Below, in pieces: positions 811-25,200 of a DNA stretch of 64,000 nt (within the stretch, counting starts at the first letter, position 1; the number at the start of each line of letters is the position of its first letter). Source of the stretch: Guillardia theta CCMP2712 (Eukaryota; Protista; Cryptophyta); the NCBI RefSeq assembly GCF_000315625.1, contig NW_005434666.1:62001-126000 (forward strand), given 5' to 3'. Under the pieces are notes generated by a model. It was not told where the DNA came from and did no database searches. It was given only the letters and a program-made list of their open reading frames with translations. Made by a program: the position numbers and the translations under genes.

Positions 811-2209
811 TATCAGGAGCACTTCAATTTGAGTAAAGAAGACGAGAGCCCTGACACATCTTTACTCAAAGGTAAGTATCAGGAGCCACTTCACGGGAGT
901 CCGATCGTGGTACAAAGCCCAGGTGAGTGTTCAACGGTTGCCGGCCCAAGAGTTTCCGGCGGCCCGGATTCCCTGGAACGATCATGGCACCGTCGGTCAG
1001 CGGCGGTTAATGATGGCAGTCAGGTCACACCGACAGGCCCAGTACAAGGCAGCACTATTATCTCGAGATCAGCTCGGAGGCCATGGGTGGAGGCCGCAGC
1101 GAATGCCCTTTTTTCACAATAAGGAGTGATTTCAACATGCTCTGGTTTCTTTGGTGCCGGATAGCCGCAAGTTCATGGCTGTTGACACCCGATCTTAAAC
1201 AAATCTCCCGTCAGCCGGAGATACCTCTGTCTAGCGAGGCGGGTTTGCCTGGAATATCCTCTAGGCTATGTGCAATAGACACCGTATGCTCTCCGGGGGT
1301 ACTGTGAGGACCGGTGTAAATTTATTATCAAGAAGGGGTGACAGGAGAGATAGGCCAGTAAGACTGAGGGGTGGGGTCTAGAAAAGCCTCAGAGTATCAG
1401 TAGAGTAGTAAAGGTAGTAGTAAAGGTATGGAACGTAGGACATGTGAGGGCCCGAAGAAGGCGCGGCAGCGAGCCATGTTCAACTGGTATAAGGAAAAGG
1501 TACTGAAGCCTTTTACATATATTTTTAAAGATTCCTGATTGTATTGCAAAGCTACCAAATGTAGAGTAAGCGGTACAAATGGTTCGAGTTGGTTTCCAAT
1601 TGCTAAAACCGCCTCGTGACAAGTAGCCGCAGCGCTGGAGGAACCAGAGGAAGCAATTCCCTACACCTACCGGGTCATTTAAAGGGCTCAAAATGGATAT
1701 GATGGGGTGGGGTAGGGTTTTCCCCTGTCACGAGACACCCAGAGCCTGTAAGAGGATACAGCAAAGGCCCTTTCAAAACGTTGTGAAAAAGAAACGATTC
1801 ATTTCCGGAGATCAACGAGATCGACAAGCCACTTCTCCGAGGTGTTAATGCGCGTAATGACACCGGAAGGACCCCACCCTTTTTACTGTCTACAGGGAGG
1901 GGTTCTCGCTGATGAACCCCACTTGACTCAATGATGACAGATTCAATTTAGCAATATAGGGCACAAAAGATCTCTTTTCACCTTCAAAACATTTTTTTGC
2001 ACTTTCTGGAGAGCCGTAACTTGACGAATCGCTGTATGTTCTGACAAAAATAAGTATGATGACATCAAACAGTTCTATTCTGCTGAGATTCGCTGACAGT
2101 TTTTCCCAAACATTGCGATCTGGACTTTTGCCTGCCAATATATCCCTTTGCGCTCTCGTCGTTGGCCCCCCGTCACCCAATCTCCGACAGATCCAACTTG
2201 TTCCTCTCC

Positions 2210-2292
2210 CACTCCTCCTCCCTCTCCTACTCCTCCTACTCCTCCTGCTCCTCCTGCTCCTCCTGCTCCTCCTGCTCCTCCTGCTCCTCCTT
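2210..2292. repeat. (ctcctgctc)n-type simple repeat
   Basis: Tandem 9-mer visible in the sequence. Confidence 0.9.
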
Positions 2293-2373
2293 TCTTGAAA
2301 CCTATCCTATCAGAACACTGCCCTCTCCGAAGCTCCTCGGACTTCAGAGTCAGATTGACGCGCTGCGTGTCGA

Positions 2374-2733
2374 ATGGTAAAAACTATCCAAAGGACAAAA
2401 AAAGACAGCCAGAGGATCATGCAATTGTCAAAGGAATCATTTGAGGATTTTTATGGGTACAAGCCCCTTGTCTCACCAGTGAGTACTGAGGATAACTTGG
2501 TCACGGATTTCGCGCGTTTCCGCGGGTACAACGAAGATCAATCAATCCGTGTTGCTTTCGATTCGATATGCATCGATGACATGAATGCAAAAAGGAAGGA
2601 TCTTTCCATGGAGACATGGGTCGACACTATCAGACGTTTTGATGACTCTTACCCCGCAACGGGCCAAACGTGCATTGCCAAAGCGATATCAAGGCGTGAC
2701 CTCAATGAATCCGTCGGTGCTCGCGTCTGCTGA
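2374..2733 (+). CDS. hypothetical protein (119 aa ORF or exon)
   Basis: ATG-initiated ORF with globular-like composition; no motif recognised. Confidence 0.25.
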   Translation: MVKTIQRTKKDSQRIMQLSKESFEDFYGYKPLVSPVSTEDNLVTDFARFRGYNEDQSIRVAFDSICIDDMNAKRKDLSMETWVDTIRRFDDSYPATGQTCIAKAISRRDLNESVGARVC

Positions 2734-4599
2734 TTCCGCACCCATGTATAGATTCTAAACTTAACATTGGTGGTTTTCCTGTGTAGATTTTGAATTGGTA
2801 TGTTGGCAACTTGCTTTTTCTACCAGTTGTAAAATAGCTAGCTCGTTAAATGTATGGTATTGTATTATAGGATATCTTGTTTTGTAATGAAACACAACAA
2901 CCCTTCTATGACCACCATCAATCAGATTCTTCAAAGATTCGTCTCCAAGAGAAACGTCGCCTCTGTCCGATTGGCATGGAAGCTGCTTTGCTCGTTTACT
3001 GTGTGCTGGACGTACGCAAGTATCTCAGAAAGATAGTCTGGATCATTCCCTCCTTGTATTTGTTAGCCTTTTGCGTGAAGAAGAAAGTTTAAGATCTTAC
3101 TTACAAGTTCACATACGCAGCACTGTCCTAGGAGGATCAAACAACATAAAATTTTAGGATTGAATGAATTCAAAATCTTTTCGAATGTCGCCTGCATATC
3201 ACTTGTAGCTGTGGTTCTCCTCTGCACTGAATTGACCATCTTGAGGGTACAGCAGGTCTGACCATGAATGCATCATCTTTGCAACTTTCCCGTTGCTGCT
3301 CTTCCGCCGAGCTTGTTCTCCGCATTGAAATCACAACTCGTTCGGGGGGGGGGGGGGGGGGGAGGTCGTCGTTTTCGACAGTGAGATTAATTCACACAAC
3401 TTTTTCAGATGTTGAGTACGAAGGCTGTTGAGAACGTTACAGCATCTGATTTGCTGCAACAAGTGATGTTATGATTGGATCTTGCTTGTTCTCCCTGATC
3501 CTAACAACTTGTTCCCTGAACCAGCGGCTCCGAATGCAGAATTTCCATCTCCTCTGTGTGTCGTTTTACTTGAGTCTGAATGATCCGAAGGAGGCAGAGA
3601 GCGTGCGCGAGAGCGCACGGGAGCGAAAAGAAATCAATTGGAATCATCAAAGGCAATCCAAAGCTAGGCAGAGGATAGAGCAACCTACATCATGCCTTAC
3701 CAGGGAAAGATGAGGGCCAAAGCAGAGGCAGCTCAAACACTTAAAACACTTACTGGACGAGCGACAGAATGCACGAGAAGCAGGGCGGCAGGGATCTGCA
3801 CGACGAGCAGCAGCGCAAGGATCCTGCTGAATGGACAGCGACATTCATGCAAGCTCTTTGCTGCCGAAACAGACGAGGGTTCACACTCAGCGTCTACTTA
3901 CGCATCCATCCCTGGCACTAACAGCATCAAGACCATCCGCAGCTACAGCAAAGAAAAGCCTGCAGAGTTCTGATGCTGTTGATCTCTATCGATAGAGTGG
4001 CATTGAGAGGAAAACGCTCGTTTGTTGTTGTGTGTGTGCGTATACGGTGCGAACGAAACGAGGCTTGACAGCGCTAGTCAAACGATTGTCACAAGTAGTG
4101 CAAGGTACGGAATTAGCCCGGCATGTAAGTGGTAGAGGCTGCAGTGAAGCACGACTGCACGGTCTTGGTCCTCAGCCTCCCTCTCTTCTCGTCTACCTGC
4201 TGAGTTTTTCTTGTCTCGTGCTCTGGTGTATCCTTGGTATGGCAGCTTTTCTAAATCGATCCCTTCCTCCTCCCTCCCTCCCTCTAACTCCCTCCTTATC
4301 TTATTCCCTCCTGTATTCCCTCCCTCCATCCATCACTCCATCCTTATCTTTTCCCCTCCCCTCCCCTCCCCTCCTACCTACCTACCTACCTACCTACCTA
4401 CCTACCTTCTTGTGACCTCCCTCCCTACCTACTCTCCCCTTTTCTCCTATTCCCTTCGCCCCTTTCTGCCTGGTTTCGTTTCGAGACTTTTCTTGGTTTG
4501 CCATGTTCTGAAGATTGAAACCCTGCCACAGGTTTTCTGACATCCACACGTGGGGGAGATTGTTTCTAACGATTCTTCTACTGATGTTGTTTGCACATA

Positions 4600-17799: not shown

Positions 17800-18215
17800 T
17801 CATGCCGTACTACCCGTACCCACGGTGGCACGGTGTGACGGGCGACCGTACGGTACCCGGTCCGAGTCCACCCAGTACCGCGGTGACCGTACCAGTCTAC
17901 AGAGTACCCGCCGGCACCCCTCCCGCCCGGCCAAAGTTCAAGTCTTGTGGCTCTAGTCAAGTTCTACATCCCTAGGCTCTCCGCTTCACGTCTCCTCCAA
18001 CTACACCGACTGTGTCTGCTACGCCGTTTCTGATGCCAGTGCCAGCCTGAGTGTGGCACAGGCCGTCGCGGCGGCCCCGCCGCTGTCACGCCGGCTGGCA
18101 GGCTGACCGTGCTGAGTGCCGCGCCGCCGCGCACTGGCCGGCTCAGACTGGGTGACGCCGGTCGGACGCCGCCGGGCGCCGGGCGGCCCGGGCGGTCAGT
18201 GCCCGCCCGCCCCTC
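17800..18215. repeat. GC/CpG-rich island abutting the RT fragment
   Basis: Composition as for the other islands. Confidence 0.5.
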
Positions 18216-18238
18216 CAGCTATCGTCTTTGCAGGCAGT

Positions 18239-19006
18239 GACTTGAGAAAACTTAATGCCATGGTCCACAGCAACCCCAGGTATCCCACTCCTAACCCTGA
18301 GGAGATGTTAGAATCTGTCGCCGAGGTCATTCGCAAATCCAAGCGTTTCTTGCACCCTGCTGAATACAAACTTTGGATTTCAGCTCTCGATCTTCTCCGC
18401 TGTTTTTGGCAAATTCCTGTTGCCCCTGATCATCGCAAATATGTCGCCATCATCACCAAGTTTGGCAAATATCAGTTTCGCAATCTTCCATTCGGCTACA
18501 TTCACGCAAGCAATATTTTTCAAGAATGGATTACTCTTCTCTTTCGTGATATTACCAGTGTATTCCCGTACATTGATGACTTGCTCATCCTTGATTTCGG
18601 CACGTTTGATCAACACCTCAACACTCTTCGTCGCGTTCTTCTGCGATGCCGCGAGAATCAAGTTTACATCAAGAAATCAAAAGTCAAGCTCTTTCAAGAT
18701 AGTGTCGAGTTCCTCGGTCATCAAATCTCTGCTGAGGGCATATCGACCCAATCCAGCAAGACCAGTGCGATCCTTGACTGGCCACCACCCAGCAACGCAA
18801 AGGAGATCAAAATATTTCTTGGGCTCTCCGGATATTACCGTCGCTTTATTCGCAACTATGCCCACATTGCTGCTCCTCTTCATGCTCTTCTTCGTAAGAA
18901 TGCTGTCTTTCAATGGACTCCCGAGTGTCAGCAATCCTTTGATCTTCTCAAACACCGGTTAACCTCCTCTCCAATTCTCTCTCACTTCGATCCAGCGCTT
19001 AAGACT
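18239..19006 (+). mobile_element. Ty3/gypsy LTR-retrotransposon reverse transcriptase fragment
   Basis: DLRKLN, LDLLRCFWQIPV, YQFRNLPFG, YIDDLLI, VEFLGHQIS, FLGLSGYYRRFIRNYA, FQWTPECQQSFDLLK..LTSSPILSHFD; no gag, protease, RNase H, integrase or LTR seen. Confidence 0.95.
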
Positions 19007-19021
19007 AGTATGTGCTCTTAT

Positions 19022-20846
19022 TTAGTATATCCTGTGCACGCTTGTCGGATTTGAACGACAGATCGGGCATGGCCTGGAAGCTGCTCCCTCCTTGTGAACC
19101 TCACAGAGACACATGTGTCCACAGGGGATCAGCGCCCACACGGCCTCTCGCTCCAAGCAGATGACGCACTGCTGACTGTAATCATCGGGCTCATCCTCAC
19201 TTGAACTCTCTGCCACCGTTAAGTCGTGTTGTTGCAGCTTTCTTTGCAAGTCGCTGAACCCTGGCCGCTCTGACTTCCGCTCCCTCCAGCATTCCAGCAT
19301 GATGCTGTACACAGCTGCCGGGCACGACGGGGATCTCGGAAGTCGCTCACCGCCGAGGACCTTAGTTTCCACAAGCGAATCCTCCGAGACGCTCTCATAA
19401 GGAATTTTCTCGGCATAGGTCCAGATCTCCCACATGGTCACCCCGAACGCCCACACATCGCTCTTCTCCGAGAACTGCCTTCTTTCGATGCTCTCCGGTG
19501 CCATCCATCGGACTGGCCGAGTCATCGACCGTGCCGTGTTGAAGCTCGCTGCATGGCTCTGACGGTACCACCGCGCAGATATGATGGACAATCCGTAGTC
19601 AGCGACCTTCACACTCACATCCAGGTGATTCCGCGCATCCAGGCGGAACACCAGCACGTTCCTCGTTGCCAGATCCCCATGCACTACCCCATGCAGTGCA
19701 AGATGTACCATCCCGTCGCAGATCTGCCTTGCAACCTGCAGCTGCACCAGTAGACTGAGAGTCTGACGTTCCTTAGCAAGGCTCGACAGGATGACATCCA
19801 ACGCACCCTTGGACGCTAACTCCGTCACCATGCAGTAGTCGCCTGACCCTGGCTCGTTTGTGATGGCAAGAAGTTGGAGGAGTTTCGGGTGAAATCCCAA
19901 GTGCTGGAAAATCTTCACCTCCTGCTCGAACTCTTTCATCCTCCCAGCGGATCCGCTGCCACGGATTCGCAGGACCGCCACTTCGGAGCTGGCCCCATGC
20001 GGTTGCTGCCATCGGGCCTGGTACACGAGCTTGAAAGTGCCTACGCCGATCTGCCGCATGTCAGTGAGGGAATCGAAGTCGACCGAAGCAATGCCTTTGG
20101 TCTCACGTATTTGCCTCTTTGAGAGAAAAATAATTGACAACAAAGTCACGAGCACAGTCGGAATAACGACTGAGAACTGTATATTTGTACACCGATGTAG
20201 GCACTGTTCTAGGTTCCCGTCACACAGTCGAGCAAAACTTGGCCAGGATGGATGATAGCACTGTAGTTTGTTGCCTGTAAGGTCTACATACACAAGCGAA
20301 GACAAACCGGTAAAAGCCAGGGAGGAAATAAAGATGTAGATACTGCAAGCTCGAGAGCCCGTCGAAGATCCCTGTAGGCAGACTCTTCAGTTTGTTGTTG
20401 GAAAGTGAAAGCCTCTGCAAGCTCGAGAGCCCATCAAAGACTCCTGCAGGCAGACTCTCTAGCTTGTTGTAGTGAAGAGATAGAGTAGACAAGCTCGAGA
20501 GCCCGTCGAAGACCCCTGCAGGCAGACTCTCCAGGTTGTTGTTGGAAAGATATAGATGCTGCAAGCTCGAGAGCCCGTCGAAAGTCCCGTTTGTTATGTT
20601 CCAAATACCCTTTGAGTCCATGCTCAAAGTTTTCTGACCCCCCTGATCAGTTCCACAGTCCCCCCCACAGCTTCCCTCCCTCGACAGCAAACCCTCATCC
20701 GAGACATGGAACGTGCAGCCCCCACAGCTCTCGCTGCTTGCTGCCTCGGCCTTAGGACATATCCATACCCCTAGTACAACCCAAAGCACATATACACACA
20801 GCATCCTCCTCATGCTCCCTCCTTCACTCCGCATCAACGGGGCCAT
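19022..20846 (-). pseudogene. LRR receptor kinase (signal peptide-LRR-TM-tyrosine-kinase-like domain-RING), frameshifted near 20330
   Basis: 24-aa LRRs (LQHLYLSNNNLESLPAGVFDGLSS), TM FSVVIPTVLVTLLSIIFL, kinase motifs HGDLATRNVL/VADYGL/PVRWMAPES/SDVWAFGVTMWEI, RING CVIC..PCGHMCLC..CPICR; two overlapping ORFs in different frames (could also be a sequence error or a spliced-out lesion). Confidence 0.8.
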
Positions 20847-22231: not shown

Positions 22232-25200
22232 ATGAATGCATCTGAGGCCGCGCAACCAAAACTTAGCCGCTTGAAGACTTTCAAGGAAGGATGGCCGCAT
22301 CGCTTCTCTTGCCCCAACCCTCTTCAGCTAGCTAAGTCAGGGTTCGAGTACCAGGCGAATGGGATGTGTCTTGACTCGGTGGTGTGCTCGATTTGTCAGC
22401 TGAAGGTGTCAGGATGGCAGGAGGGAGACAACCCTTTCTTCATTCATCGCTACAAGTCTCCCTCGTGCAAGCTCGTGCAACATGATGTCCTTCACACTCG
22501 GATCAACCTGCAAGGCCCCACAACACCGCCATGTAGGCGCCAGACGTTTGTTGCTTGCCGAGGAAGGGTCGACCTGCAGCTGCGGCTCGAACATGACGAG
22601 AGCGGAGGACCTGAGCGCGTGCTGCATGTCTTCTTGCAGAGAGGGAGAGGGATCGTGTCTGACGCACCGACTCCACCCAGCCCCGTGTGCGTCTGTCGCC
22701 TGCGCGTGATGGGAGAAGAGTACGAGTCGGGCGAGGCCTGCAGTACGGCAGTAGACGAGCTGAGCACATGCACAACAAGCCCGACATGGAACTTCGACTG
22801 CGCCTTCCAAACTTGCGCTCCTCGCCTGTCCATCCTTGAGATCACCCTCTGGGACGCTGGTATGCTCCAGGAGGAAGGCAGTTTGCTTGAAGAGGAAGGG
22901 AGACGGAGATTGGAGGAGAAATCCAAGGAATGGACGGGGTGGGAAGAGGAAGATCGCGAAGACTCGGCAGGGACGATGGGGAGATGGCATCGTTCTCAGC
23001 AAGTTGTTGACTACTACAAGCACTCTCGCACGTCAACAGCTTACATCGGAACCGTCATGATCAGTCTGACCCAACTCACTCAGCATCCGGGTCGAGAGAT
23101 CCCAATGTCGTGCAGTCTCATCCAACCAACGGCCTCCTCCCTCTTCATCTCAGCTGCAAGGATCCTGCAGGCGGCCTGGAGGAGGCTGCATGCTGTCAGG
23201 CTCGTCGCTCTATCCCGCTGCTCGGCAAGGTGCAGAAGCAGCAGCTTCAGAGTGTTTGTGGTCGCAGCAAGAAACCTGCCCATCACGCCGATGAAGGCTG
23301 CTGACTTCCACCTCGCAAGGAGCGGAGGGCTCAACCGCTACCTCCCTCAGCTGGACTGCTTCCTCCGCCTGCTCGTCCTCGACGACTCGCTCCGCCCTGC
23401 TCGCGGGGTGCGATGGGACGGGCTTGACGAGCTGTGCAACATGCGCGGAGGATTCCTGACAGACGCCGCGCGCGCTCCTGCAAAATTTCCGGATGACGTT
23501 CTGCGGGAATACTCGGGTGAGTGCGAGCGGGAAACGAGGGAGGGATACAGAGGAGGAGATGAGCAGCAGGAGAGAAGCGGGCCCTCGCTCCCCCGCGGCC
23601 GCCTCGGGCCTCGCTTCCCCCCTGGGGTTGCTAGTAGAAATGATCTGTGATCCCTTTGACCTACCTCTCTGCAATGCTATCTTCTTTCTTGATCACATTC
23701 TCTCCCGCCATCTATCGCTATCCCTACCTCCTCGCTCCTCGTCCTCGTCCTCGTCCTCGTCCTTGTTTTCTCTCTTGTCGATCGAATGTCAGTGACATGC
23801 TCATCAGACGGACAGGAGTGGGCAGGGATGGGCTGGGGGAGGGATCCTCTGTTCAACCTCTCTGCGGCTTTCACAACAACTCAGAACAGCAACGCGAGGA
23901 TGCTGCGACTGGACGTGTACAACTGTCCTCCCGAGCAGGTGTTTTTGACTCCTGACCTCTGTATCCAAGCCAACCTGGTGGGGAGGGTGACGTTGGACCT
24001 GTATGATGGAGATGGTTTCAATCACACGCTGGAGAGCTTTGTAAATGTGATGCTCAAATCTGCGCGCGATGAGTTGCAGATGAAAAGTTTCGAATGGAAG
24101 GAGCTTGTCGACGATAAGTGCGAGGGAGTGAAGGGGAGAAGCATCAAAGGCTGGTCGCCGTCTCAGATTCTTTTCTCTGTTGAGCGCGAGACCAATAACA
24201 TTGATCGACATGTTGGGAGGAGATCGACGGAGGCAAGAGGACAAATTCAGGTCTTGTTCAGCATTTGCTGGACATGGCGGATCGCTGACGAGTTCAGGAT
24301 AGGGAGATCAATCAAATGATGAGCAAGCTGACAAGAGTGAAAGCCTTGACAAGATTCGGACGCTAAGTGACCTGGTGGAGGAACGAGTGAAAGACTTGAA
24401 GAGCGATTCCCAAGTCAGTGAGAACATGTCGTGATCTAAGAACATGACAGTCATGCAGCGAGAAACGTTTGTTACATGGGAGAAATTTTCAGACGTGTTG
24501 AAGTTGCAAGGTAAGGGAATCCTGCACAATGTTAGTCTCTCGTTCGTGTTGTTGACATCTTCAGCAGGGACATCTATCATAAGAGCTGAGAAAGATGCAA
24601 ACTTGGCTCTTGACCAGAGACCCAACGTCTTGTCAAGTGATATTGTGCAGAGTTGTTGGTTTTGACGATTACAGTTCTATGATGCAGATTCATTGACGGG
24701 AGGGGGAACGTTTCGTTGCAATCTTCTGTTCTTCTCTCTTGTTGAGAGCGTGAGTGTTGGAGTTGGAGTTTTTGACAAGGAGGTACTTTCCAAAAATCTT
24801 GAGGTGTCACACCTTGCCCGAGTCGTTGTTCCAAGGAGTCCAAACAAAACTACCTCGCCGCATGTTTCTGTTTGATTTTCCTCTGTTGTTGTTTGAACTT
24901 TGATTTTCCTCTTGCTATTGTCCAATGTTCTTGACACTTGACATCATGTTATCACAAGTTGTTTTCGAGAGCTTATCTGATCACTGCTCCTCCCGTATCA
25001 CTTGTTGTCTTCACACTCCATCTTGTAAGTCTGACATGCTGGCAGGATGTAGCCAAGTCTTACTGGGGAAGACGGAGATGGCGCGATAAGATCTGGTGGG
25101 TCGACGGACTGACAGGACGAGCCTTCAACGGCGAGGAGGAGATGAAAGTGTTGCCGTCGTGTGAGATTGGAGGAGGTACGAGCGAGATGATGACAGCGGG

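What the first reader, a model, noticed from the sequence alone, without database searches (positions are those of the whole stretch)
19200..20060. Tyrosine-kinase-like receptor domain with a WNK-style relocated catalytic lysine, non-RD
Seen: the beta-3 VAxK lysine is replaced (EVAVLRIR, ~19970-19981), and a lysine occupies the third Gly of the glycine-rich loop (GVGTFKLVY, K codon 20030-20032). The rest carries tyrosine-kinase signatures (DLATRN, PVRWMAPES, SDVWAFGVTMWEI), with HGD for HRD and DYG for DFG. Established: GxGxFKxVY with no beta-3 Lys is the defining arrangement of WNK kinases, which are otherwise unrelated cytosolic Ser/Thr kinases; non-RD kinases are enriched among pattern-recognition receptors. 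Inference: an independent evolution of the WNK solution in an algal receptor TK/TKL. It would be active although a motif scan would call it a pseudokinase.
Basis: partly seen in the sequence, partly recalled or inferred. Interest (0 to 1): 0.82.

Follow-up and report, generated by a model that had tools for sequence, protein, structure and literature searches.

The report
Tyrosine-type kinase with WNK-style lysine
This cryptophyte-alga gene belongs to a large, apparently undescribed protist family of tyrosine-kinase-type enzymes, usually fused to a ubiquitin-ligase RING or U-box, in which the ATP-anchoring lysine sits in the glycine loop as otherwise known only from WNK kinases; this particular copy has a frameshifted receptor part and may not work.

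Summary
On the minus strand of this Guillardia theta window, one ORF (19022-20305) encodes a TM helix, a PF07714 kinase and a C3HC4 RING. It reads GVGTFKLVY, with Lys on the third Gly and Leu at the beta3 VAVK site, plus HGD, DYG and PVRWMAPES.

This is not decay of one copy. In 76 non-redundant relatives forming one clade (SH-aLRT 98), the loop Lys is kept in 74 and the beta3 site is never Lys or Arg. The alphaC Glu, HRD-Asp, Asn and DFG-Asp are mostly kept. Members come from cryptophytes, prasinophytes, Telonema, a choanoflagellate transcriptome and marine metagenomes. Every relative with a beta3 Lys has the normal Gly.

The nearest sequences and folds are tyrosine kinases, not WNK, so the WNK-like layout arose independently. 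A working beta2 lysine is inferred, not shown.

HGD is specific to this copy; most relatives have HRD. The LRR ectodomain is out of frame with the rest because of a 20-nt deletion relative to the intact sister gene. This copy's branch also evolves faster (omega about 0.36 against 0.10), so its own activity is doubtful.

The scan found this family before on other DNA of this genome (s1-432824, s1-434746). No RNA reads could be laid.

The parts
20220..20846 (-). ORF for a signal peptide, a Cys-rich cap and leucine-rich repeats (the ectodomain). It lies in a different frame from the downstream ORF.
   Evidence: 208-aa ORF; LRR_8, 5.5e-28.
20330..20331 (-). Site of a 20-nt deletion relative to the sister paralog L002, which has AGCTACAACAGGCTTTCCTG here. 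It removes most of one LRR and shifts the frame.
   Evidence: DNA alignment with near-identical flanks. (no convincing in-frame GT-AG intron). (L002 has the full repeat).
20123..20176 (-). Transmembrane helix FSVVIPTVLVTLLSIIFL, followed by basic SKRQIR. It is preceded by an LRR C-terminal Cys-rich cap (about 20177-20320).
   Evidence: translation. (homologous cap and TM, VVIPTVLV, in L002 and other loci).
19235..20059 (-). Protein kinase domain of tyrosine-kinase type.
   Evidence: PF07714, 5.6e-63, residues 83-357.
20030..20032 (-). Lys codon (AAG) at the third-Gly position of the glycine-rich loop, at the start of strand beta2. This is the proposed relocated catalytic lysine.
   Evidence: 74 of 76 in the clade. 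(the equivalent K22 is the first residue of beta2 in the AF2 model).
19970..19972 (-). Leu codon (CTG) at the beta3 VAVK lysine position.
   Evidence: (the site is L52, Q6, M5, V4, A4, S3 in the clade; never K or R).
19919..19921 (-). AlphaC glutamate (the last E of EFEQEV), the usual salt-bridge partner of the catalytic lysine.
   Evidence: E in 72 of 76.
19658..19681 (-). Catalytic loop HGDLATRN. The Arg of HRD is replaced by Gly in this copy, while the Asp and Asn are kept.
   Evidence: (R 68, G 4; D 62; N 70, each of 76).
19592..19600 (-). DYG in place of DFG. This is a family-wide trait.
   Evidence: D in 72 of 76; Y 49, F 24.
19490..19516 (-). PVRWMAPES, the subdomain VIII signature of tyrosine kinases.
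19423..19459 (-). After it was not sent to any database search, and all later searches used flanking pieces or homologs.
19040..19174 (-). C-terminal C3HC4 RING finger (CVIC...CGH.C.C...CPIC) with all eight ligands present. The stop codon is at 19022-19024.
   Evidence: PF13920, 3.9e-10.
18116..19054 (+). Context: a reverse-transcriptase ORF of a retroelement. Its RNase H homology is cut off at about 19009, some 13 nt from the kinase gene's stop codon.
   Evidence: RVT_1, 1.5e-20; RT_RNaseH_2 matches only profile positions 1-32 of 100.

Best explanation
The window carries one member of a large protist clade of tyrosine-kinase-type domains. In this clade the lysine that anchors ATP and pairs with the alphaC glutamate no longer sits on strand beta3, which has Leu here. 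It sits two residues before the conserved beta2 valine, on the third-Gly position of the glycine loop. That is the cross-strand neighbour of the old site and the same position as Lys233 of WNK1.

The switch happened once, at the base of the clade, independently of WNK, and has been held by selection since. The family are most likely working (probably tyrosine or dual-specificity) kinases that use the beta2 lysine. They are coupled in the same chain to a RING or U-box ubiquitin ligase, so that phosphorylation and ubiquitination are linked.

Shown: the motif arrangement, its conservation, its single origin, the tyrosine-kinase kinship, and the domain architecture. Inferred: that the beta2 lysine is catalytic, the substrate class, and the kinase-E3 coupling.

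This copy and its sister gene L002 are receptor versions (signal peptide, LRR, TM, kinase, RING). Here the ectodomain is frameshifted by a 20-nt deletion, HRD has become HGD, and constraint is relaxed. I put about 40% on this copy being a dead or dying gene. The kinase-RING ORF itself is still well preserved.
For: The motifs were read directly and aligned to solved tyrosine kinases.

All 20 or more close paralogs in the genome, and more distant ones, have the loop Lys and lack the beta3 Lys.

In the database homologs where both sites could be read, the two lysines never occur together, and every sequence with a beta3 Lys has the normal Gly. A few have neither lysine: P0089, P0104, P0162, P0163. 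At under 90% identity the counts are 74 loop-K/no-beta3-K, 8 canonical, 2 neither and 0 both.

The tree was built with the two trait columns removed. The loop-K set plus the two nested 'neither' rows form one clade (SH-aLRT 98, stem 0.73), and the minimum of 2 state changes suffices. A 306-domain tree gives a clade of 99 rows, 94 of them loop-K.

Within the clade as defined by the tree, the loop Lys is kept in 74 of 76. That is more than the alphaC Glu (72), DFG-Asp (72), Asn (70) or HRD-Asp (62). The beta2 Val (69) and beta3 Ala (66) that flank the two sites are also kept.

The AF2 model of a family member has pLDDT 91.8, and its Lys is the first residue of beta2. Its nearest folds are EGFR, FAK, ACK1 and TRK.

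dN/dS between the query and its sister is 0.21. The query departs from only 3 of 56 columns that are at least 85% conserved, against a family median of 2.

The established WNK1 mechanism is a beta2 Lys233 replacing the beta3 Lys, and this placement is still described as unique to WNKs (PMC4718504; PMC13686953).
Against: There is no biochemical evidence and no atomic coordinates, so the reach of the lysine to the alphaC Glu and ATP is argued from strand geometry only.

Because the switch is one evolutionary event, the co-occurrence is not many independent trials.

In tandem multi-kinase proteins, 25 of 55 domains with neither lysine still keep E, D, N and D. Intact remaining motifs therefore do not prove activity.

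Two G. theta subfamilies kept the loop Lys while losing the catalytic Asp/Asn (HRELAARS) or the DFG Asp (AGFG). The Lys may therefore have a role other than catalysis.

The beta3 site holds a bulky Leu, whereas WNK1 has a small Cys.

For this copy specifically: the ectodomain is frameshifted, the motif is HGD, the branch omega is about 0.36 against about 0.10 in the sister, there is no ATG upstream of the kinase in its frame, and no read evidence could be obtained.
Confidence: 0.58

Rival explanations
1. The whole family are pseudokinases. The kinase-like domain only binds nucleotide or a partner and serves as a regulatory scaffold for the attached RING or U-box ligase. The loop Lys is kept for ATP binding or structure, not for phosphoryl transfer.
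For: A motif scan does find the beta3 Lys missing. Subfamilies that lost the catalytic Asp/Asn or the DFG Asp still keep the loop Lys. Domains with no lysine at either site can still keep E/D/N/D. An E3 domain gives the protein an output that does not need catalysis.
Against: The catalytic Asp, Asn, DFG-Asp, alphaC Glu, the second loop Gly and the APE Glu are kept at 82-100% across a clade that has diverged to about 35% identity. That pattern is unusual for dead kinases. The only known family with this exact lysine layout, WNK, is active (PMC4718504).
Confidence: 0.27
2. This particular copy is a dead or dying gene, whatever the family does. On this view it is a compacted duplicate of the L002-type receptor gene that lost its reading-frame continuity. 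This rival is not exclusive of the family-level reading.
For: There is a 20-nt deletion inside an LRR relative to the sister gene, with near-identical flanks, and no plausible in-frame intron. The only ATG in the kinase frame lies 4 codons before the glycine loop. HRD has become HGD. The branch omega is about 0.36 against about 0.10. A truncated retroelement abuts the 3' end. The two 48-nt introns and the stalk and juxtamembrane segments of L002 are absent.
Against: Both ORFs (208 and 427 codons) are free of stops although dS on this branch is about 0.26. Only 3 of 56 conserved kinase columns deviate. The RING ligands are complete. The deletion could be an assembly error in a repeat. A run guessed to be RNA holds 81% of the locus's words.
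Confidence: 0.4
3. The pattern is random decay of a canonical kinase in this one gene, with the Lys in the loop a coincidence. This is the refuting case named by the first reader.
For: None beyond the single sequence.
Against: The same two states are fixed in more than 90 non-redundant relatives from several eukaryotic lineages.
Confidence: 0.01
4. It is a divergent true member of the WNK family.
For: The loop tetrapeptide GSFK is identical in most family members, and beta3 lacks Lys.
Against: The catalytic loop is HRDLAARN and subdomain VIII is PxRWMAPE. PF07714 scores far above PF00069. All of the best 60 PDB sequence hits and the best 50 fold hits are tyrosine kinases. No OSR1_C/PF2 domain was found in this genome. 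The clade's sister groups in the trees are canonical tyrosine kinases.
Confidence: 0.01

Closest known systems
WNK (with-no-lysine) Ser/Thr kinases, e.g. WNK1 Lys233
   Same: The lysine sits on the third-Gly position of GxGxFK at the start of beta2, there is no lysine on beta3, and the alphaC Glu, HRD, Asn and DFG-type Asp are retained. The loop tetrapeptide GSFK is even identical in most family members.
   Different: It is not related beyond the general kinase fold. The catalytic loop and subdomain VIII are of tyrosine-kinase type. The beta3 residue is Leu/Gln/Met, not Cys. The motif is DYG/DFG, not DLG. There is no autoinhibitory, PF2/CCT-like or coiled-coil region, and a RING or U-box is attached instead. 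Activity and any anion sensing are untested.
Holozoan tyrosine kinases (EGFR, JAK, ABL, FAK, Eph, ACK1)
   Same: They are the best sequence and fold matches. HRDLAARN-type catalytic loop, PxRWxAPE, VK[IV]xD[FY]G and the overall fold all agree (TM about 0.8).
   Different: They have the canonical GxGxFG loop and the VAVK lysine. They lack C-terminal RING or U-box fusions. They are found in animals and their unicellular relatives, whereas this clade is mainly from cryptophytes, prasinophytes, Telonema and marine metagenomes, plus a choanoflagellate transcriptome.
Plant kinase-E3 fusions: KEG (RING plus kinase) and class IV U-box proteins with a kinase domain (from my own knowledge)
   Same: A protein kinase domain and a RING or U-box ubiquitin ligase lie in one polypeptide.
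   Different: The plant kinases are of RLK/Pelle type with a normal beta3 lysine. The domain order differs in KEG. There is no evident common origin with this clade.
Non-RD LRR receptor kinases of plant immunity (FLS2, XA21 class; from my own knowledge)
   Same: The architecture is LRR ectodomain, one TM and a cytoplasmic kinase. This copy lacks the Arg of HRD.
   Different: The kinase is of a different group (tyrosine-kinase type, not RLK/Pelle). The non-RD state is peculiar to this copy and three other clade members, not to the family. The ectodomain is out of frame here.
Pseudokinases defined by loss of the beta3 lysine (for example as catalogued in PMC4718504)
   Same: A motif scan would place it in this class.
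   Different: A conserved lysine sits on the neighbouring strand, and the remaining catalytic residues are conserved across a deep clade.

Membership tests
WNK kinase family | Catalytic lysine on beta2 (GxGxFK) and none on beta3 | tested here: met
   This is a resemblance in mechanism and is not sufficient for membership.
WNK kinase family | Sequence kinship with the WNK/NRBP branch (Ser/Thr-type catalytic loop HRDLKxxN) | tested here: not met
   The catalytic loop is H[RG]DLA[AT]RN. PF07714 scores 213 bits against 105 for PF00069. The best 60 PDB hits are all tyrosine kinases and the best 50 folds are all tyrosine kinases. No WNK sequence could be put in the tree.
WNK kinase family | Accessory regions (autoinhibitory or PF2/CCT-like domain, coiled coils, RFxV motifs) | tested here: not met
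   Pfam finds only the kinase and RING domains. PF12202 is not found in the genome.
WNK kinase family | Chloride binding at the site freed by the moved lysine | not testable with these tools
   No coordinates are returned by the model. The motif is DYG rather than the DLG of WNK.
Tyrosine kinase group (TK) | HRDLAARN-type catalytic loop and P-x-[KR]-W-x-A-P-E in subdomain VIII | tested here: met
   HGDLATRN and PVRWMAPES here. HRDLAARN/ATRN and P.RWMAPE across the family.
Tyrosine kinase group (TK) | Closest sequences and structures are tyrosine kinases | tested here: met
Tyrosine kinase group (TK) | Canonical beta3 VAVK lysine and GxGxFG loop | tested here: not met
Tyrosine kinase group (TK) | Phosphorylation of tyrosine | not testable with these tools
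   This needs an enzyme assay.
Pseudokinase (motif definition) | Lacks at least one of the beta3 Lys, the HRD Asp or the DFG Asp | tested here: met
   The beta3 Lys is absent and both Asp residues are present. The definition says nothing about a compensating lysine.
RING E3 ligase (zf-C3HC4_3) | Eight zinc ligands C-x2-C...C-x-H-x2-C-x-C...C-x2-C | tested here: met
   PF13920 at 3.9e-10 over residues 378-422, with all ligands readable. E3 activity is not testable here.
LRR receptor kinase | Signal peptide, LRRs, TM and kinase in one continuous coding sequence | tested here: not met
   All four modules are present. The LRR ORF and the TM-kinase ORF are in different frames because of a 20-nt deletion relative to sister L002, and there is no convincing intron. 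The feature is met in L002.
Non-RD kinase | No Arg before the catalytic Asp | tested here: met
   HGD at 19673-19681. Only 4 of 76 clade members share it.

The most novel reading that the evidence does not exclude
A second, independent invention of the WNK active site. An entire clade of tyrosine-kinase-type enzymes of marine protists would work with a beta2 catalytic lysine and be hard-wired to a RING or U-box ubiquitin ligase. The 'unique' WNK solution would then be a recurrent one. Like WNKs, these kinases might use the space freed on beta3 for a small-ligand or anion switch.
Probability: 0.45. Interest if true: 0.8.

Novelty: new variant of a known kind. Interest (0 to 1): 0.64.

Why it matters
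The beta3 lysine is one of the three residues used to call a kinase dead or alive, and WNKs are the textbook exception. A 2026 review still calls their lysine placement unique (PMC13686953). A deep, widespread clade of tyrosine-kinase-type domains with the same relocation would have three consequences:
- The WNK solution would be shown to be convergent.
- Hundreds of predicted 'pseudokinases' in protist genomes and marine metagenomes would need reclassifying.
- There would be a natural experiment on what the relocation is for, because the same trick sits in an unrelated scaffold attached to an E3 ligase.

It also bears on the origin of tyrosine-kinase signalling outside animals. For this locus alone the significance is smaller, because it is a possibly disabled receptor-type copy of that family.

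Tried and rejected
Later searches used window:19460-20122, 19958-20083, 20090-20320 and 20215-20430, or homologs from other loci. Only my own closed-sandbox scripts still used the translated whole domain, to map alignment columns and as one row of the local trees.

WNK comparison inside the same genome. A GxGxFKTVY DNA pattern and PF12202 found nothing, so no WNK sequence could be placed in the tree.

A 42-aa glycine-loop piece searched against PDB gave no hit.

Literature. Six full-text searches and several look-ups found no description of this arrangement outside WNK. Kwon et al. 2019 and Manning et al. 2008 are not held, so prior description cannot be excluded.

The representative search was dominated by tandem multi-kinase proteins and served mainly as a background set.

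The IMG/VR scan gave five loci, all with canonical Gly and VAVK and none with the loop Lys. One (L078) looks like a retroviral abl and was left alone.

Animal proteins, including primate ones, listed were not used.

Intron rescue of the frameshift. All in-frame GT/GC-AG pairs were enumerated. None has a credible acceptor or keeps the LRR cap.

'Both-lysine' intermediates. Two such domains exist, but they are not near the clade.

No complex-prediction job was sent, because no binding claim is made.

No atomic distances could be measured, because the model's coordinates are not returned.
Full report
**What is there**

The window is from the nuclear genome of the cryptophyte alga Guillardia theta CCMP2712.

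On the minus strand, an ORF at 19022..20305 (427 codons) encodes:
- the end of a leucine-rich-repeat region with a Cys-rich cap;
- a transmembrane helix (FSVVIPTVLVTLLSIIFL, 20123-20176);
- a kinase domain (PF07714, 5.6e-63, 213 bits; PF00069 only 105 bits);
- a C-terminal C3HC4 RING (PF13920, 3.9e-10).

Immediately upstream, but in another frame, ORF 20220..20846 encodes a signal peptide and LRRs (LRR_8, 5.5e-28).

On the plus strand a retroelement reverse-transcriptase ORF (18116..19054) ends against the gene's 3' end. Its RNase H homology is cut after 32 of 100 profile positions.

**The observation**

- GVGTFKLVY, with the Lys codon AAG at 20030-20032.
- EVAVLRIR at 19961-19984, with Leu at 19970-19972.
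- HGDLATRN at 19658-19681.
- DYG at 19592-19600.
- PVRWMAPES at 19490-19516.

A HMMER search of the N-lobe-to-APE piece against all PDB sequences returns tyrosine kinases as all 60 best hits (JAK, EGFR, ABL, Eph, insulin receptor). The alignments are gapless here. The loop Lys lies opposite the third Gly of GxGxFG, and the Leu lies opposite the VAVK lysine.

**It is a family trait, not decay of one gene**

The genome holds more than 20 close paralogs (55-77% identity), and all read G.G.[FS]K.VY and VA[IV][QL]. More distant paralogs do the same. The ordinary TKL kinases of the same genome (L059, L061, L067) read GxGxFG with VAVK.

Two database searches gave the same picture. Wherever both sites could be read, the two lysines never occur together, and every sequence with a beta3 Lys has the canonical Gly. 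A few members have neither lysine: P0089, P0104, P0162 and P0163.

After removing sequences over 90% identical, 84 complete domains split as follows:
- 74 with the loop Lys and no beta3 Lys;
- 8 canonical;
- 2 with neither;
- 0 with both.

**Tree evidence**

A maximum-likelihood tree was made with the two trait columns left out. It puts the 74 loop-Lys domains plus the two 'neither' sequences in one clade (SH-aLRT 98, stem length 0.73), next to canonical Src-like tyrosine kinases. The states need only the minimum of two changes.

A 306-domain FastTree that includes a background of tandem multi-kinase proteins recovers a clade of 99 rows, of which 94 have the loop Lys. The five loop-Lys rows outside it are four degenerate tandem-array domains without a glycine loop, plus one long-branch sequence. 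Two domains with both lysines are unrelated to the clade, so no intermediate was found.

The switch is therefore essentially one ancient event, and the co-occurrence must not be read as many independent trials. The informative point is how well the state has been kept since.

**Conservation within the clade**

Within the 76-member clade as defined by the tree, counts out of 76 are:

| Position | Kept in |
|---|---|
| Loop Lys | 74 |
| AlphaC Glu | 72 |
| DFG Asp | 72 |
| Catalytic-loop Asn | 70 |
| HRD Asp | 62 |
| Second loop Gly | 71 |
| Beta2 Val | 69 |
| Beta3 Ala | 66 |

The loop Lys ranks about 12th to 16th of 295 columns. The beta3 site is Leu 52, Gln 6, Met 5, Val 4, Ala 4, Ser 3, and is never Lys or Arg.

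In the background set, only 2 of 152 domains with a beta3 Lys have Lys at the loop position.

**Who has it**

Named sources are:
- Guillardia, Hanusia phi and Rhodomonas (cryptophytes);
- Tetraselmis and Pyramimonas (green prasinophytes);
- Telonema subtile;
- transcripts labelled Stephanoeca diplocostata (a choanoflagellate; contamination is not excluded);
- many marine metagenome contigs.

Most members are cytosolic. They have coiled-coil-rich or other N-termini and a C-terminal RING (PF13920) or U-box (PF04564). Some also carry ubiquitin, PDZ, ankyrin or LRR modules. A scan of IMG/VR found only canonical kinases.

**Kinship**

The Pfam scores, the catalytic loop HRDLAARN, PxRWMAPE, the PDB sequence hits and the fold search all place the family with tyrosine kinases.

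The fold evidence comes from an AlphaFold2 model of a family member, P0003:135-428 (pLDDT 91.8, pTM 0.90). Its best 50 hits are all EGFR, FAK, ACK1 or TRK, with TM about 0.8.

No WNK accessory domain is present. The resemblance to WNK is therefore convergent. I could not fetch a WNK sequence to put in the tree.

**How it probably works**

In the kinase N-lobe, beta2 and beta3 are antiparallel neighbours. The conserved beta2 Val and beta3 Ala face each other over the adenine ring (established kinase architecture).
- The third-Gly position lies two residues before that Val.
- The catalytic Lys lies two residues after that Ala.

The two positions are therefore cross-strand neighbours pointing the same way. 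Moving the lysine from one to the other shifts its Calpha by one strand spacing and keeps it aimed at the phosphates and the alphaC Glu.

This is what WNK1 does with Lys233, which is required for its activity (PMC4718504; PMC13686953). In the model, the family's Lys is the first residue of beta2, which spans residues 22-29, and beta3 spans residues 37-44.

The retention of the Glu partner and the other catalytic residues argues for a working kinase using the beta2 lysine. This step is inferred. I had no coordinates and no assay.

**Points against a working kinase**
- Leu at the beta3 site is bulkier than the Cys of WNK1.
- 25 of 55 background domains with neither lysine still keep E/D/N/D.
- Two G. 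theta subfamilies lost catalytic residues yet often keep the loop Lys: HRELAARS, and HRDLAARH with AG[FY]G.

The attached RING suggests that the kinase controls, or is controlled by, ubiquitination within the same chain. This is also inferred.

**This copy**

Three things set it apart.

(1) HGD. Only 4 of 76 clade members lack the Arg, and the sister gene has HRD. DYG, by contrast, is family-wide (Y 49, F 24).

(2) A broken frame.
- The closest paralog, L002 on contig C9 (77% identity), has a coherent gene. Its parts run signal peptide-LRR-cap, a 48-nt GT-AG intron, stalk-TM-juxtamembrane, a second 48-nt intron, then kinase (HRD)-RING.
- The DNA alignment shows that the window lacks 20 nt (AGCTACAACAGGCTTTCCTG in L002) between 20331 and 20330, inside an LRR, with near-identical flanks.
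- This puts the LRR ORF and the TM-kinase-RING ORF in different frames.
- Enumeration of all in-frame GT/GC-AG pairs gave no credible intron.
- The only ATG in the kinase frame lies four codons before the glycine loop.
- The window copy also lacks both introns and the stalk and juxtamembrane segments of L002.

(3) Rate. Pairwise dN/dS to L002 is 0.21. A three-taxon split with L003 gives about 0.36 for the query branch and about 0.10 for the L002 branch. These are rough Nei-Gojobori values.

Against decay:
- both ORFs are stop-free;
- the RING ligands are complete;
- the kinase departs from only 3 of 56 highly conserved columns (S to A, the HRD Arg to Gly, P to S), against a family median of 2.

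I rate a dead or dying gene at about 40%. An assembly error in the repeat is the main alternative.

**Expression**

- A run guessed to be RNA holds 81% of the locus's sampled words. This is weak.
- Family members occur in Hanusia and MMETSP transcriptomes.
- One MMETSP transcript (P0172) is 99.7% identical over its C-terminal part to a G. theta paralog locus.

After, no letters of 19423-19459, nor P0001 (the identical protein), went to any database, fold or look-up tool. Flanking pieces and homologs were used instead. Local sandbox scripts still used the translated domain for column mapping and as a tree row. Animal hits, including primate ones, listed, and a retrovirus-like abl locus (L078), were not used further.

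**Novelty**

Six full-text searches found no description of this layout outside WNK. A WNK review of October 2026 still calls the placement unique. Two key kinome papers are not held, so prior mention cannot be excluded.

The scan itself found the same family on two other pieces of this genome, and those agents reached the same reading (s1-432824, s1-434746). I class it as a new variant of a known kind: a tyrosine-kinase-type clade with a WNK-type active-site layout.

**Verdict**
Convergent WNK-style relocation holds, at the level of a whole family. 'Receptor', 'non-RD' and 'active' need the qualifications given above.
- Interest is 0.64.

Noticed in passing
L002 (G000:C9:1058770-1062849), minus strand, about 1498-3667 in locus coordinates: The sister gene looks like the intact version of the window's gene. 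It runs signal peptide-LRR-cap, a 48-nt intron, Ser/Thr/Pro stalk-TM-juxtamembrane, a second 48-nt intron, then kinase (HRD, loop Lys)-RING. It would be the better copy for experiments.
   Followed up: partly
window 18116-19054 (+): A retroelement reverse-transcriptase ORF has its RNase H homology cut off about 13 nt from the kinase gene's stop codon. The kinase gene is also intronless, unlike its sister. The locus may therefore be a rearranged or retroposed copy inserted in a retroelement.
   Followed up: partly
L009, L011 (G000:C118, C6) and protein P0172: Some paralogs carry the loop-Lys kinase followed by a caspase-like Peptidase_C14 domain instead of the RING. The MMETSP transcript P0172 (860 aa) is 99.7% identical to the downstream ORF of L011.
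   Followed up: partly
L010, L013, L016-L021, L026; and L041-L055 (many small contigs of G000): There are two multi-copy, near-identical subfamilies with degenerate catalytic motifs. One has HRELAARS. The other has ISAGSSQTLY / HRDLAARH / AGYGRA, with the loop Lys changed to Gln in many copies. They behave like a repeated element or a recently amplified pseudokinase set. dN/dS of one pair is 0.62 at dS 0.024.
   Followed up: partly
proteins P0252-P0373: Many metagenomic proteins carry 2-10 tandem tyrosine-kinase-like domains (P0252 has 10 in 2911 aa), mixing canonical domains with domains lacking both lysines. A small separate group of tandem-array domains (P0284, P0299, P0303, P0341) has Lys at the loop position without any glycine loop.
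   Followed up: no
proteins P0089, P0104 (U-box fusions) and P0162, P0163 (Sel1/TPR fusions): These clade members secondarily lost the loop Lys (Asn, Gln or His) without regaining a beta3 Lys, yet they keep HRD, Asn and DFG.
   Followed up: no
window 22232-23650 (+): The neighbouring ORF of 472 aa was noted by the first stage as a BIR-C2-IQ fusion (s1-441470). I did not examine it.
   Followed up: no
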